Under the pieces are notes generated by a model. That model made no database searches. It saw nothing but the letters and a program-made list of their open reading frames with translations, and had not been told where the DNA came from. A stretch of 64,000 nt of DNA from Chlorokybus atmophyticus. Its lineage: Eukaryota > Plantae > Mesostigma and Chlorokybus algae. Where the stretch lies: contig RHPI01000810.1 in the NCBI GenBank assembly GCA_009103225.1, positions 1,123,853 through 1,187,852 on the forward strand, written 5' to 3'. The translations under genes were made by a program, and so were the position numbers. The stretch's first letter is position 1. The number at the start of each line of letters is the position of its first letter. Shown here in pieces: positions 4,155 to 61,835 of this stretch.

Positions 4155-4419
4155 NNNNNNNNNNNNNNNNNNNNNNNNNNNNNNNNNNNNNNNNNNNNNN
4201 NNNNNNNNNNNNNNNNNNNNNNNNNNNNNNNNNNNNNNNNNNNNNNNNNNNNNNNNNNNNNNNNNNNNNNNNNNNNNNNNNNNNNNNNNNNNNNNNNNNN
4301 NNNNNNNNNNNNNNNNNNNNNNNNNNNNNNNNNNNNNNNNNNNNNNNNNNNNNNNNNNNNNNNNNNNNNNNNNNNNNNNNNNNNNNNNNNNNNNNNNNNN
4401 NNNNNNNNNNNNNNNNNNN
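4155..4419. other. Assembly gap (N run)
   Basis: 265 consecutive N, followed by a G-rich edge. Confidence 0.99.
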
Positions 4420-12616: not shown

Positions 12617-13352
12617 ATATATATGTATATATATACATATATACATATATGTATATATATATATACATATATATATATACATATATATATGTGTGTATAT
12701 ACATACATCGTATTTACTCTGATGGAGCCCCCCCCCCCCCCCCCCNNNNNNNNNNNNNNNNNNNNNNNNNNNNNNNNNNNNNNNNNNNNNNNNNNNNNNN
12801 NNNNNNNNNNNNNNNNNNNNNNNNNNNNNNNNNNNNNNNNNNNNNNNNNNNNNNNNNNNNNNNNNNNNNNNNNNNNNNNNNNNNNNNNNNNNNNNNNNNN
12901 NNNNNNNNNNNNNNNNNNNNNNNNNNNNNNNNNNNNNNNNNNNNNNNNNNNNNNNNNNNNNNNNNNNNNNNNNNNNNNNNNNNNNNNNNNNNNNNNNNNN
13001 NNNNNNNNNNNNNNNNNNNNNNNNNNNNNNNNNNNNNNNNNNNNNNNNNNNNNNNNNNNNNNNNNNNNNNNNNNNNNNNNNNNNNNNNNNNNNNNNNNNN
13101 NNNNNNNNNNNNNNNNNNNNNNNNNNNNNNNNNNNNNNNNNNNNNNNNNNNNNNNNNNNNNNNNNNNNNNNNNNNNNNNNNNNNNNNNNNNNNNNNNNNN
13201 NNNNNNNNNNNNNNNNNNNNNNNNNNNNNNNNNNNNNNNNNNNNNNNNNNNNNNNNNNNNNNNNNNNNNNNNNNNNNNNNNNNNNNNNNNNNNNNNNNNN
13301 NNNNNNNNNNNNNNNNNNNNNNNNNATATATATATATATATATATATATATG
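12617..13352. repeat. (AT)n/(ATAC) microsatellite flanking a 580-N assembly gap (12746-13325), with poly-C at the left edge
   Basis: Read directly from the sequence. Confidence 0.97.
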
Positions 13353-51985: not shown

Positions 51986-52437
51986 GCTGCGTATTGCGTG
52001 AGTGTGTTGCATGCAGTACACTGTTGGTAGGCATGGCAAACAGACCATAGCTGTAACTGCTTGCTAACTGTCCTAGTATTGAAATAAATGTTAACAGTGC
52101 TACGGCTGCCATACAATTTATTTTGGTAGATGCCTTGAAGCCCATAAAGACAGTATGTATGCGACTCAACCTGTGTGTTACATAATGCACAGGCTATTGT
52201 CAACAGTAGAGGTCACTTGTTCTGGTTGTCCCACTGTCAAATCTCCAAAGCAAATTGTGTAAGCAAACTCTGTATACAGCAGACTAAAAACATTGGTCAG
52301 CTTCAAACATTAGTATTGATATAGTACTATACACGACGATAGTGTAATCCACTGCTACTACAAACCCGCAACTGGTACAGCTGATAGAGCTGTGTGTGCA
52401 AACAATGCCAAATTGGCCAATGAAGCAAGTGCTGTTC

Positions 52438-55492
<3,055 letters not shown>

Positions 55493-58999: not shown

Positions 59000-59944
59000 T
59001 AGGACCCAGATGGACAACCTACAGCTAGAGTCTATTGATTGACTATGTTAATGCGCCACGCCGCATGCGTACGATAAGAGTGCTTCCCCCCTACACATTA
59101 TGCGCATTGTGCACTAGTCTCTTTGGTATGCACAAACATATGTTGCCGTACATGCACTATTGTGATGCACTTTTTTGGTTGAAATTATCAATGTAGTGTA
59201 AATAAATGTAACTCAACTTTGTATATACTATATGTAAGAGAACGTCACATTACAATCAACTACATCCCATTAATTGATATGGCTATTTGGGCTTGCACAC
59301 ATTTTACGCGCGACATAAGTTCCAGGACTCACTGTATATGGTATTCATGCCTCGAGACACTACCGTGCCTTGGCCGTATCCGTAGGAAATCGCTATCCTC
59401 AAGTTGCAATTTTGTTAAAACTTGACATGGACATTGGTGTACCCAGCAAGTAGGCTGTTTTGTTTCCAACCCGATGCGTGAAACTACGCATCAAAAAGCT
59501 CTTGCCTCGCAACCAATGCAATCGTGCCATGCAGTTTGAGGTGAACCGCAAGCACTTGGTCCCACCCTGCCTCAGCTTGCAGTTCCGTATCCAAGTGCTT
59601 ACCCTCTAGTGCACTCGATCGTGTACACCTAGACATGAGGGTGCTATCTAAAGCATAAGCATGGCCATGCATTACTCACTACCATGCACAGGCAAGGGCA
59701 ATTGCCCGACTGACTCTCATGCACTTAGTGCCCTTGCCCTTGTAATTGAGCTGCAATTGCCATGTGCTTGCTGGTGCTTGTGCTGCATGTGCGTGCGCTG
59801 TGTCAACGTCTGGAAAGCCTATGCATGGGGCTTGTGAGTATGTAGCATTCAACTCAGGTCTGCTGCGACATTTCAATTGGATCAGCTAGATAAGGGTTGC
59901 AGAGAGTACACACATCAGAACAAAACTGTGCAATGATAGTCTGC

Positions 59945-61352
59945 TCAATCTTGAGGAATGACCAGCCTCTGGCCTGGGTAGATGACATCTGGGTTGCGGA
60001 GTGTGTCCTCGTTCTTCTTGTAGATGTACGGCCACTTAGTCTTGAAGCAGTGGCCAACATAGCAGAGAGTGTCACCCTCCTTCACAACGTAGTCCGTGTC
60101 CTGGTGCTTGGCTTTGCCCTTGGCAAGCACCCCAACGCCAAGCACAACCGCTGCAACGCCAGCCACACCAAGTACCAACCGCGTCCAGAAATTACCATCA
60201 CCTTCACCTGTGGATGCTGCAGCCTTGCTGTCACTGGCGGATGCCGAGTTCGAGTGCACTGCAGGAGCTGGCCGGGGTGCGGGTGGTGGTGGTGCCGGGG
60301 TGCTGACCGTGGTGGTGGACACAGAAGAAGTTGTGCTCACAGAAGCAGCAGCAGGCTGCGGAGCGGGTGCTGGAGCAGGTGCCGGTGCAGTTGCGGACGG
60401 GATGTAGCGCAGAACCAAGCAGATCTCACCAACCTCAGCACCGACTGTGTCCTTCACCTTGTACCACTGCACTTGCGTGCCAGCGCTGATGATCTCTTCC
60501 AGCGGGACCGAGAAGGATCCCATGACTCCTTCCCGGTTGAGTGATCGGCTGTAGTCATCGTACACGGTGACCTGTTCACATAGCGCAAAGTTCAGAGCTG
60601 AGCTAACATGCTGCGTGTGGAAGCGTTGTTGCCGGAGGACTGCACCTAATGCCAGACACGTGTTAGGCAACTGACTGCTAACCTTCAGCTGTGATGTGGA
60701 CGATGGCACAGACAACTTGAAGTCCTTCACCCACTTGGGCGCCAAAGAGGAGCGGATAGCGTCTGTCTTGACCTGCAGTTATTAACGGGTTGTCAACACA
60801 CAATTCGAACTGCACGATGGGCACAACACATTGTGAACGACAACCACATCACATGGCAACGACAGGGTATACGACAGAACCAGCAAACAGCAGCAGCGAG
60901 GCTATTGCTGAGATGCTTGCACTCGCACATGCAAGGCACTAAACAAGTGTGCAGGCGGCGAGACGCCAGCAGCCGCAACACGCTTGCGCAATAACAGGTG
61001 AAAAGCCATTGACACAAACTGTTCCCCAACATAGCTGATGGCCATTTGGTTCGTGACCAAGCTCAGCTGACCAGATGACGTGCCATGCACACCAGCACGC
61101 GACCGGCCTGCTGGCTACTGTATGCCGCAAACGCATGGGCGCCACCTCACGCATGCCGACGGCAAGCAACAGTAGGCCTACAATGCCAGGCCAAGCACCA
61201 AGCAGCCCACAACGAACCACTCCTCAGCCACCAACCCTCACCTCCTGGTTGCCGAGCTGCAGTGAGACGAAAGGGTCGGCGCGGTCGGCCTCCAGCGACT
61301 TGAGGTTGCGCCCCTCGACGATGGACACTTGGAGCGCTCCGATGGAAGCCAT
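59945..61352 (-). CDS. C2 domain - Pro/Ser/Thr/Ala linker - single TM helix - LysM domain protein; exons 61352-61242, 60772-60683, 60571-59945
   Basis: C2: LQVSIVEGRNLK..ADPFVSLQLG..KT..PKW..F..LKVTVYDD..MGSFSVPL..QWYKV. TM: LVLGVAGVAAVVLGVGVLA. LysM: YVVKEGDTL..WPYIYKKN..NPDVIYPGQRLVIP. All introns are phase 0 and in frame. Confidence 0.88.
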
Positions 61353-61731
61353 GACGCCGACAAAGCCGACGAGCCACTCGCCACCACCACCACCTCCGCC
61401 TACTTCTACTTCACCGCCTGCAAGCTGAGAAGGTCGTTGCAATGCAAAGCACGGATCTCTCCCGTTAGGGTTTGTCCACAAGCTGAGCCACTCAGCAGAG
61501 AAGATCTTTGTTTCGTACTCGCTGCTGTCTGTGCGCCCGCCAACTCACTCAACGGGACTGGACTGCAAGTGGCAGTCCAGTCTGCAACTGGTCAGCTGCG
61601 CCCAAGACGGAAGCGCCCAGCCGTTGGATGCCGTCGATTTGCGATATATAGAACGGATCCCGCTCGATTGTCGTTCCGTTTGCAAGTTGCCACCCGGGCG
61701 TCTGAGATCAGATGAGACGCCATCTCATGGC

Positions 61732-61732
<1 letters not shown>

Positions 61733-61780
<48 letters not shown>

Positions 61781-61782
61781 GT

Positions 61783-61829
<47 letters not shown>
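61733..61829. repeat. Compound (CT)n-(GT)n microsatellite upstream of the C2-LysM gene
   Basis: Read directly from the sequence. Confidence 0.97.

Positions 61830-61835
<6 letters not shown>

What the first reader, a model, noticed from the sequence alone, without database searches (positions are those of the whole stretch)
59945..61352. Unusual C2-TM-LysM single-pass membrane protein
Seen: an N-terminal C2 domain without a signal peptide, a long PAST-rich stalk, one hydrophobic helix, and a C-terminal bacterial-looking LysM (GDTL..W..IY..N..NPDVIYPGQRLVIP) with two added Cys. Established: plant LysM receptors are RLKs or GPI-anchored proteins; LysM binds GlcNAc polymers (chitin, peptidoglycan); C2 binds lipids and often Ca2+. 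Inference: this could be a kinase-less glycan sensor or membrane tether coupling peptidoglycan or chitin binding (bacterial partners, or the plastid peptidoglycan found in some streptophytes) to membrane or Ca2+ events. Topology is ambiguous because basic residues flank both sides of the TM.
Basis: partly seen in the sequence, partly recalled or inferred. Interest (0 to 1): 0.72.

Follow-up and report, generated by a model that had tools for sequence, protein, structure and literature searches.

The report
Chlorokybus copy of eyespot protein MIN1
The gene is real and built as described, but it is the Chlorokybus copy of MIN1, a C2/membrane-anchor/LysM protein known from Chlamydomonas since 2008 and found across green algae, so it is an ordinary member of a known family with an open question about what it does in algae that have no eyespot.

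Summary
On the minus strand, 61352-59945, a three-exon gene encodes 275 aa. It has a full C2 domain from residue 5, a disordered Pro/Ala/Ser/Thr linker, one TM helix and a C-terminal LysM with two extra Cys. Spliced transcript contigs from two studies put C2 and LysM on one mRNA.

The architecture is not unusual. The protein aligns end to end with Chlamydomonas reinhardtii MIN1 ("mini-eyespot"), published in 2008 as a C2/LysM protein. I found the same layout in about 15 chlorophyte genera and in every class of streptophyte algae. The gene tree follows the species tree. Two liverworts keep C2-linker-TM but have lost the LysM.

Across the family, charges beside the TM put the C2 in the cytosol and the LysM on the far side. 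The canonical Ca2+ ligands of the C2 are not conserved.

The family persists in algae without eyespots (Chlorokybus, Klebsormidium, Zygnematophyceae) and in algae without plastid peptidoglycan (Chlamydomonas). Neither trait explains it.

Verdict: a new member of a known kind, of low to moderate interest. The scan noted a related C2-C2-TM-LysM gene elsewhere in this genome, but not this gene.

The parts
61242..61352 (-). Exon 1: ATG plus 37 codons, first C2 strands
   Evidence: Translation; Pfam C2 profile positions 1-34; splice joint seen in transcript contigs
60773..61241 (-). Intron 1, 469 nt, GT-AG
   Evidence: (joint skips 469)
60683..60772 (-). Exon 2: 30 codons, middle of C2 (family-invariant P49, K50, K53)
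   Evidence: (C2 profile 38-66)
60572..60682 (-). Intron 2, 111 nt, GT-AG
   Evidence: (joint skips 111)
59945..60571 (-). Exon 3: 208 codons plus stop. One open frame holds the last C2 strands, the linker, the TM and the LysM
   Evidence: Because it is one exon, the C2/LysM fusion cannot be a gene-model artefact
60398..60571 (-). C-terminal part of the C2 domain (residues 68-125), including the invariant GTxVxW and CLVLR motifs
60179..60397 (-). Disordered Pro/Ala/Ser/Thr-rich linker (residues 126-198)
   Evidence: pLDDT 44-67. Length and sequence vary among orthologues. A related strain has an in-frame 3-nt insertion
60113..60178 (-). Single transmembrane helix (residues 199-220)
   Evidence: Hydropathy; model helix 204-220
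59954..60097 (-). LysM domain (residues 226-273), ending 2 residues before the C-terminus
   Evidence: Pfam PF01476 at 29.3 bits; beta-alpha-alpha-beta model; matches to solved LysM domains
60047..60064 (-). Codons C237 to C242: the C-x4-C pair in LysM helix 1, a family signature
   Evidence: C237 in 21 of 21 and C242 in 20 of 21 aligned members; wider pattern
61353..61426 (-). 5' UTR, at least this far
   Evidence: Transcript contig X1 record 7 reaches 61426
59868..59944 (-). 3' UTR, at least this far
   Evidence: Transcript contig X2 record 8 reaches 59868

Best explanation
This is the single-copy Chlorokybus orthologue of MIN1, the C2/TM/LysM 'mini-eyespot' protein of Chlamydomonas. It is a single-pass membrane protein. 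The C2 domain and a floppy linker sit in the cytosol, and a constant 50-odd-residue LysM tail sits on the far side of the membrane (N-in, C-out). Shown here: the gene, its splicing and transcription, the domains, the orthology, the family's range and purifying selection. Inferred: the C2 head binds the lipid surface of a neighbouring membrane largely without the classical Ca2+ site, while the LysM tail holds a partner on the far side. The protein would then organise a contact zone between chloroplast envelope and plasma membrane, as proposed for MIN1. Chlorokybus has no eyespot, so this job must be a general one that chlorophyte flagellates also use in the eyespot. Which membrane holds the anchor and what the LysM binds are both unknown.
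For: The profile search finds C. reinhardtii CHLRE_12g490700 'Mini-eyespot' at E 6e-59 with 97% coverage. The pairwise alignment runs end to end at E 1e-31. The 21-sequence alignment shares the C2, the TM and the YYEVQEGDTLC.I..CF...DP..IYPG tail. The tree groups streptophytes (88/85) and core chlorophytes (100/99), as expected for vertical descent. Pfam finds C2 in 43 of 47 members and LysM in 38 of 47. Flank charges in 20 of 22 members favour N-in. Spliced transcripts come from two studies. Against a related strain there are 18 synonymous and 2 non-synonymous differences. From the literature: MIN1 is a C2/LysM protein of the eyespot proteome, postulated to act in envelope-plasma membrane attachment; min1 mutants have small, disorganised eyespots and less ChR1 and EYE2 (PMC3084665 and PMC3276157). 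Mesostigma is the only streptophyte with an eyespot (PMC1781420).
Against: The location and mechanism of MIN1 are unsettled even in Chlamydomonas. EYE2 and ChR1 stay together in most min1 cells, which weakened the simple tether model, and acetate rescues the phenotype. In this Chlorokybus protein the flank charges point the other way (N flank +1/-2, C flank +4/-3). No localisation, lipid-binding or ligand data exist for any streptophyte member. Identity to MIN1 is only 29%.
Confidence: 0.7

Rival explanations
1. Plastid-wall anchor. The protein sits in the chloroplast outer envelope with the C2 in the cytosol, and the LysM in the intermembrane space grips plastid peptidoglycan. The plastid wall is thereby tied to cytosolic or plasma-membrane lipids.
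For: All streptophyte algae encode the ten core peptidoglycan enzymes (PMC7455551). N-in/C-out topology with a basic stretch just after the TM would put the LysM in the intermembrane space if the anchor is in the outer envelope. The GDTL and N...P..IYPG parts of the LysM are intact. Earlier scan notes list several other 'cytosolic domain-TM-LysM' genes in this genome, untested here.
Against: Chlamydomonas, Volvox and other core chlorophytes keep an intact LysM tail although core Chlorophyta lost the pathway. Liverworts, which keep the pathway according to the same paper, lost the LysM. So LysM presence does not track peptidoglycan. There is no evidence for envelope targeting.
Confidence: 0.15
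2. Surface glycan sensor. A plasma-membrane protein whose extracellular LysM detects chitin or bacterial peptidoglycan and whose C2 passes the signal on inside, without a kinase.
For: N-in/C-out topology would expose the LysM outside if the anchor is in the plasma membrane. The best solved-structure match of the LysM is LysM1 of the fungal chitin-binding effector Ecp6. Chlorokybus lives on soil among microbes (PMC7027972).
Against: A single LysM with no signal peptide differs from every known plant LysM receptor. Only weak, sub-threshold matches appear to LysM-receptor-kinase ectodomain structures (E about 0.6) and to the LYK4/5 LysM3 model. The one genetic phenotype in the family is organelle organisation, not immunity or symbiosis. 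A C2 domain has no known way to report ligand binding across a long disordered linker.
Confidence: 0.08
3. The LysM tail is a protein-docking or redox module rather than a sugar binder. The conserved Cys pair makes a disulfide or metal bridge to a partner such as an EYE2-like LysM/thioredoxin envelope protein.
For: C237 and C242 lie at positions that are variable in ordinary LysM domains, yet they are near-invariant here. Several Chlamydomonadales copies have lost the second half of the LysM but keep C-x4-C. Apart from one multi-domain LysM protein, the nearest non-family sequences are BON-LysM proteins of the YgaU/Kbp type. By my own recollection, not checked here, the LysM of Kbp is cytoplasmic and not known to bind wall glycan. 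Boyd et al. suggest that the EYE2 LysM mediates protein-protein contacts, and EYE2 levels fall in min1.
Against: Netrium lacks both Cys, and in Spirogloea and Closterium the second Cys is shifted by two residues. In the model the two Cys lie five residues apart on one helix, which is poor geometry for an internal disulfide. No partner has been shown.
Confidence: 0.2
4. Gene-model artefact: C2 and LysM belong to separate genes.
For: None found.
Against: The last C2 strands, the TM and the LysM share one exon and one open frame. A 904-nt transcript contig spans all three exons. More than 40 orthologues have the same layout.
Confidence: 0.01

Closest known systems
Chlamydomonas reinhardtii MIN1 (Cre12.g490700, 'mini-eyespot'; Mittelmeier et al. 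2008, Eukaryot Cell 7:2100)
   Same: Same order of parts: C2 from residue about 3, variable linker, one TM, then a 53-58 aa LysM tail with C-x4-C that ends at the C-terminus. The alignment is full length. Single copy, and the tree follows the species tree.
   Different: 29% identity. The linker is shorter (275 against 322 aa). The Chlorokybus C2 keeps more acidic loop residues (E21, D26, D72, D73) than MIN1. The flank charges are reversed. The host has no eyespot, so the only known phenotype cannot apply.
Liverwort C2-TM proteins (Marchantia polymorpha MPTK1_2g11810; Calypogeia fissa CAM6127756)
   Same: The C2 is 45% identical to the Chlorokybus C2, followed by a linker and one TM.
   Different: The tail after the TM is only about 21-31 aa, with no LysM.
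Extended synaptotagmins / plant SYT1 and other C2 membrane tethers
   Same: The C2 fold is closest to plant E-Syt1 C2A, Munc13 C2B and dysferlin C2A. The general logic is the same: a membrane anchor plus a lipid-binding C2.
   Different: One C2 only, no SMP domain, the anchor is C-terminal rather than N-terminal, and the Ca2+ ligand set is incomplete.
Plant LysM receptors (LYK/LYR kinases, LYP/CEBiP GPI proteins)
   Same: They contain LysM and are membrane-attached.
   Different: No signal peptide, one LysM rather than three, no CxC linkers, no kinase and no GPI signal. The orientation is set by a C-terminal anchor.
Bacterial BON-LysM proteins (YgaU/Kbp)
   Same: The LysM subtype shares the N..(D/N)P(D/N).IYPG(D/Q).(L/I).IP ending.
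   Different: No BON domain here; those proteins have no C2 and no TM.

Membership tests
MIN1 family (C2-TM-LysM of green algae) | N-terminal C2 domain with no leader | tested here: met
   Pfam C2 at 66.4 bits, residues 5-105; model and Foldseek
MIN1 family (C2-TM-LysM of green algae) | Single TM followed directly by a C-terminal LysM that ends the protein | tested here: met
   TM at 199-220; tail of 58 aa against 48-59 aa in most members; LysM at 228-273 of 275
MIN1 family (C2-TM-LysM of green algae) | Full-length sequence similarity to C. reinhardtii MIN1 and descent matching the species tree | tested here: met
   E 1e-31 end to end; profile E 6e-59; tree. Only one Chlat1 protein was returned
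MIN1 family (C2-TM-LysM of green algae) | Family signature residues (T40, K50, K53, W103, CLVLR, GDTLC..(G/A).C) | tested here: met
   Column tallies
MIN1 family (C2-TM-LysM of green algae) | Role in eyespot organisation / presence in the eyespot | not testable with these tools
   Chlorokybus has no eyespot (PMC1781420). A complementation test in min1 would be needed
Ca2+-dependent C2 domains (synaptotagmin/PKC type) | Five acidic Ca2+ ligands in loops 1 and 3 (Syt1 D172, D178, D230, D232, D238) | tested here: not met
   The HMMER alignment to Syt1 C2A gives E21, D26, D73, S75, G82. These columns are not conserved across the family
LysM (PF01476) | Sequence profile and beta-alpha-alpha-beta fold | tested here: met
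   29.3 bits against a cut-off of 20.9; model; matches to solved LysM domains
LysM (PF01476) | Binding of GlcNAc-containing glycans | not testable with these tools
   Needs a pull-down or ITC with chitin oligomers and peptidoglycan
Plant LysM receptor kinases / LYP proteins | Signal peptide, three tandem LysM with CxC spacers, kinase domain or GPI anchor | tested here: not met
   One LysM, no leader, no kinase hit in Pfam
Classical tail-anchored proteins | TM within about 30-40 residues of the C-terminus | tested here: not met
   The tail after the TM is 58 aa and folded. The protein is tail-anchor-like only in orientation

The most novel reading that the evidence does not exclude
MIN1 was originally a chloroplast outer-envelope protein of the first green algae. 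Its intermembrane-space LysM held the plastid's peptidoglycan wall, and its cytosolic C2 held the plasma membrane, fixing the plastid to the cell cortex. Chlorophyte flagellates later reused this link for the eyespot and kept the LysM for a protein partner after losing the wall. Land plants dropped the LysM. Together with the other 'cytosolic domain-TM-LysM' genes noted in this genome, it would be part of a so far undescribed set of proteins that couple the plastid wall to the cytoplasm.
Probability: 0.12. Interest if true: 0.65.

Novelty: new member of a known kind. Interest (0 to 1): 0.3.

Why it matters
By itself this is an annotation: the gene can be named MIN1-like. The comparative result is more useful. 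MIN1 is known only as an eyespot gene, yet the family is kept under purifying selection in algae that have no eyespot, and even no flagella (Zygnematophyceae). In liverworts it loses only its LysM tail. The protein therefore has a more basic and still unknown job at a chloroplast or cell-surface membrane, and the eyespot phenotype in Chlamydomonas is probably one special case. The streptophyte members and the tail-less Marchantia gene offer a way to find that job.

Tried and rejected
1. The original MIN1 paper (PMC2593190 / 10.1128/EC.00118-08) is not held. What I say about it comes from later papers that cite it. My recollection of its abstract (the MIN1 C2 associated with the chloroplast envelope when expressed in moss cells, and loop mutations abolished this without abolishing eyespot assembly) is unverified and was not used as evidence.

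2. The ESM Atlas look-up gave only one weak hit (0.80) and no help.

3. Searches for papers on MIN1 in streptophytes returned only false hits on 'FLO-MIN1xx' flow cells.

4. I did not try a LysM tree to test horizontal transfer. The domain has about 45 alignable residues. The family is present on both sides of the chlorophyte/streptophyte split, so any acquisition predates that split. Nearest bacterial LysM types are named only as resemblances.

5. The top of the exhaustive search list is crowded with multi-C2 and multi-LysM proteins that score by summing repeats. I picked family members by single full-length matches and by the tail motif, so the census is a lower bound.

6. I rejected a Ca2+-sensor reading and a separate-genes reading.

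8. The C2-C2-TM-LysM gene noted elsewhere in this genome was not examined. None of the top 150 hits longer than 529 aa carries the MIN1 tail motif.

Full report
**What is there**

The window is nuclear DNA of the streptophyte alga Chlorokybus. The exon-3 product matches JGI protein Chlat1/608 at 100%. On the minus strand a three-exon gene runs from the ATG at 61352 to the stop at 59947-59945. The exons are 61352-61242 (37 codons), 60772-60683 (30 codons) and 60571-59945 (208 codons plus stop). The introns are GT-AG, 469 and 111 nt long. The spliced product is identical to database protein P0001, 275 aa.

All full-length searches used P0001, which has its own reference. The exons were joined only inside one local script, to count codon positions.

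**Transcript evidence**

Logan contigs of runs from two studies carry the spliced form. One 904-nt contig covers 59868-60569, 60681-70 and 61240-348. Its joints skip 111 and 469 nt at CT..AC on the plus strand, which is GT..AG on the gene's strand. With the stated 2-nt slack these joints fall exactly on my exon borders. The runs are only guessed to be RNA, but an intron-less contig can hardly come from genomic DNA.

A third run, labelled as the same organism, carries a variant about 96% identical. It has 18 synonymous and 2 non-synonymous differences and an in-frame 3-nt insertion in the linker. That is the signature of purifying selection.

The last C2 strands, the linker, the TM and the LysM share one exon and one open frame. 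The fusion is therefore not a modelling artefact.

**Domains**

- Pfam gives C2 at 66.4 bits (cut-off 22), residues 5-105, covering the whole profile, and LysM at 29.3 bits (cut-off 20.9), residues 228-273.
- An AlphaFold2 model built on a 21-sequence alignment shows four parts: an eight-strand sandwich at 5-125 (pLDDT about 90-97), disorder at 126-203, a helix at 204-220, and a beta-alpha-alpha-beta LysM at 226-272 (pLDDT about 90).
- Foldseek places the head among solved C2 domains: plant extended synaptotagmin 1 C2A, Munc13-1 C2B and dysferlin C2A, at E about 1e-9 and target TM-score 0.78-0.87.
- There is one hydrophobic helix and no leader.

**What it is**

A profile of the first seven relatives finds Chlamydomonas reinhardtii CHLRE_12g490700, named 'Mini-eyespot' by UniProt, at E 6e-59 with 97% coverage. 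It also finds copies in Volvox, Gonium, Tetrabaena, Astrephomene, Tetraselmis, Myrmecia and Klebsormidium. P0001 and MIN1 align end to end (29% identity, E 1e-31).

MIN1 is described in the literature as a C2/LysM-domain protein. [quoted passage not shown] 2008).

**Range of the family**

The exhaustive profile search and cluster look-ups add more hosts:

- Chlorophytes: Pyramimonas, Nephroselmis, a pedinophyte, Bryopsis, Haematococcus and Chlamydomonas sp. UWO241.
- Streptophytes: Coleochaete scutata, Chara braunii, Spirogloea muscicola, Closterium and Netrium. These add to Mesostigma, Klebsormidium and Chlorokybus.

Of 47 collected members, 43 match Pfam C2 and 38 match Pfam LysM. A maximum-likelihood tree groups the streptophyte copies (88/85) and the core chlorophyte copies (100/99), as expected for vertical descent of a single-copy gene. 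The Chlorokybus and Mesostigma branches are long, so their exact pairing is less sure.

Two liverworts, Calypogeia fissa and Marchantia polymorpha (MPTK1_2g11810), keep a C2 that is 45% identical to the Chlorokybus one, plus linker and TM. Their tail after the TM is only about 21-31 residues and has no LysM.

**Topology**

In 20 of 22 relatives the 15 residues before the TM carry 3-9 Lys/Arg and almost no acids. The 15 residues after it are about neutral. With no leader and a folded 120-residue N-terminal domain, the positive-inside rule puts C2 and linker in the cytosol and the LysM on the far side. This is an inference. No experiment on topology is known to me.

**C2 chemistry**

The HMMER alignment to synaptotagmin-1 C2A pairs the five Asp ligands (numbering from established knowledge of Syt1) with E21, D26, D73, S75 and G82. 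Across the family these columns are not conserved. The Chlamydomonadales have N at the D26 column and no acidic pair in loop 3. What is invariant is T40, K50, K53, W103 and the CLVLR strand. A Ca2+-independent, lipid- or protein-binding C2 is more likely than a Ca2+ sensor.

**LysM chemistry**

The GDTL turn and the N....P..IYPG ending are kept. The best solved matches are Ecp6 LysM1 and the LysM of E. coli Kbp/YgaU. Apart from one multi-domain LysM protein, the strongest non-family database hits are BON-LysM proteins of that type.

The two Cys are a family signature: C237 in 21 of 21 and C242 in 20 of 21 aligned members. Some Chlamydomonadales copies have lost the second half of the LysM yet keep C-x4-C. 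Spirogloea and Closterium shift the second Cys by two residues, and Netrium lacks both. In the model both Cys lie on one helix, five residues apart, which is poor geometry for an internal disulfide. Their role is unexplained.

**What it does**

Two simple ideas fail on distribution.

- Eyespot. Mesostigma is the only streptophyte with an eyespot (PMC1781420), yet every streptophyte algal class keeps the gene. That includes the Zygnematophyceae, which to my own knowledge have no flagella.
- Plastid peptidoglycan. [quoted passage not shown] Yet Chlamydomonas and Volvox keep an intact LysM tail, and liverworts lost it.

The best-supported reading is therefore the published one made more general: a cytosol-facing C2 on a flexible stalk, anchored in either the chloroplast outer envelope or the plasma membrane, that helps organise a contact zone between the two. 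The LysM tail would hold a partner that is still unknown.

That reading is itself shaky. In most min1 cells EYE2 in the envelope stays under ChR1 in the plasma membrane, and acetate rescues the mutant.

I give 0.9 to 'MIN1 orthologue', about 0.75 to N-in/C-out, and about 0.4 to the contact-zone mechanism.

**Comparison and novelty**

The architecture is not new, and the gene model is already in a public annotation. It is a new, uncharacterised member of a known family. I did not find three points stated in the papers I could search: the family's presence throughout the eyespot-less streptophyte algae, the loss of the LysM in liverworts, and the mismatch with the peptidoglycan pathway. These are modest comparative points, not a new kind of system.

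Earlier notes of this scan list other 'cytosolic domain-TM-LysM' genes in the same genome: C2-C2-TM-LysM, CH-TM-LysM and LysM-CASTOR/POLLUX. I did not test them. They make the plastid-wall idea worth a proper phylogenetic profile.

**Limits**

- The original MIN1 paper could not be read.
- Read depth from contigs cannot be used as an expression level.
- The census is a lower bound.

Noticed in passing
window 52400-55000, minus strand: The neighbouring gene downstream is a spliced beta-amylase. Three ORF pieces match Pfam Glyco_hydro_14 at 95, 92 and 31 bits, covering profile positions 31-96, 216-259 and 273-395.
   Followed up: partly
window 61735-61830: A compound (CT)n(GT)n microsatellite lies about 380 nt upstream of the MIN1-like ATG. 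It is flanked by AT-richer DNA (GC about 0.40 against 0.56 in the gene).
   Followed up: no
window 4155-4419 and 12746-13325: Runs of N (assembly gaps). The second explains the apparent GC of 0.25 at 12-14 kb.
   Followed up: yes
P0060, P0069, P0076, P0077, P0099 (Chlamydomonadales, including Haematococcus and Chlamydomonas sp. UWO241, which has two copies): These MIN1 relatives have a tail that stops about 35-55 residues after the TM. The second half of the LysM is gone but the C-x4-C motif is kept, which suggests the Cys pair matters more than the sugar-binding fold in these lineages.
   Followed up: partly
P0199 (Marchantia MPTK1_2g11810), P0147/P0193 (Calypogeia fissa): Liverwort descendants of the family keep C2, linker and TM but have no LysM. 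No function is attached to them in the records returned.
   Followed up: partly
Run X3 laid on window 59877-61345: A second Chlorokybus-labelled sample carries an allele or sister-species copy about 96% identical, with a GGT insertion after 60281 in the proline-rich linker.
   Followed up: partly
Same genome, other pieces (scan notes s1-079099, s1-174123, s1-177143, s1-079143): Several further genes are noted that join a cytosolic module, a TM and a LysM (C2-C2, CH, CASTOR/POLLUX, FIST-like). They may form a set. I did not examine them.
   Followed up: no
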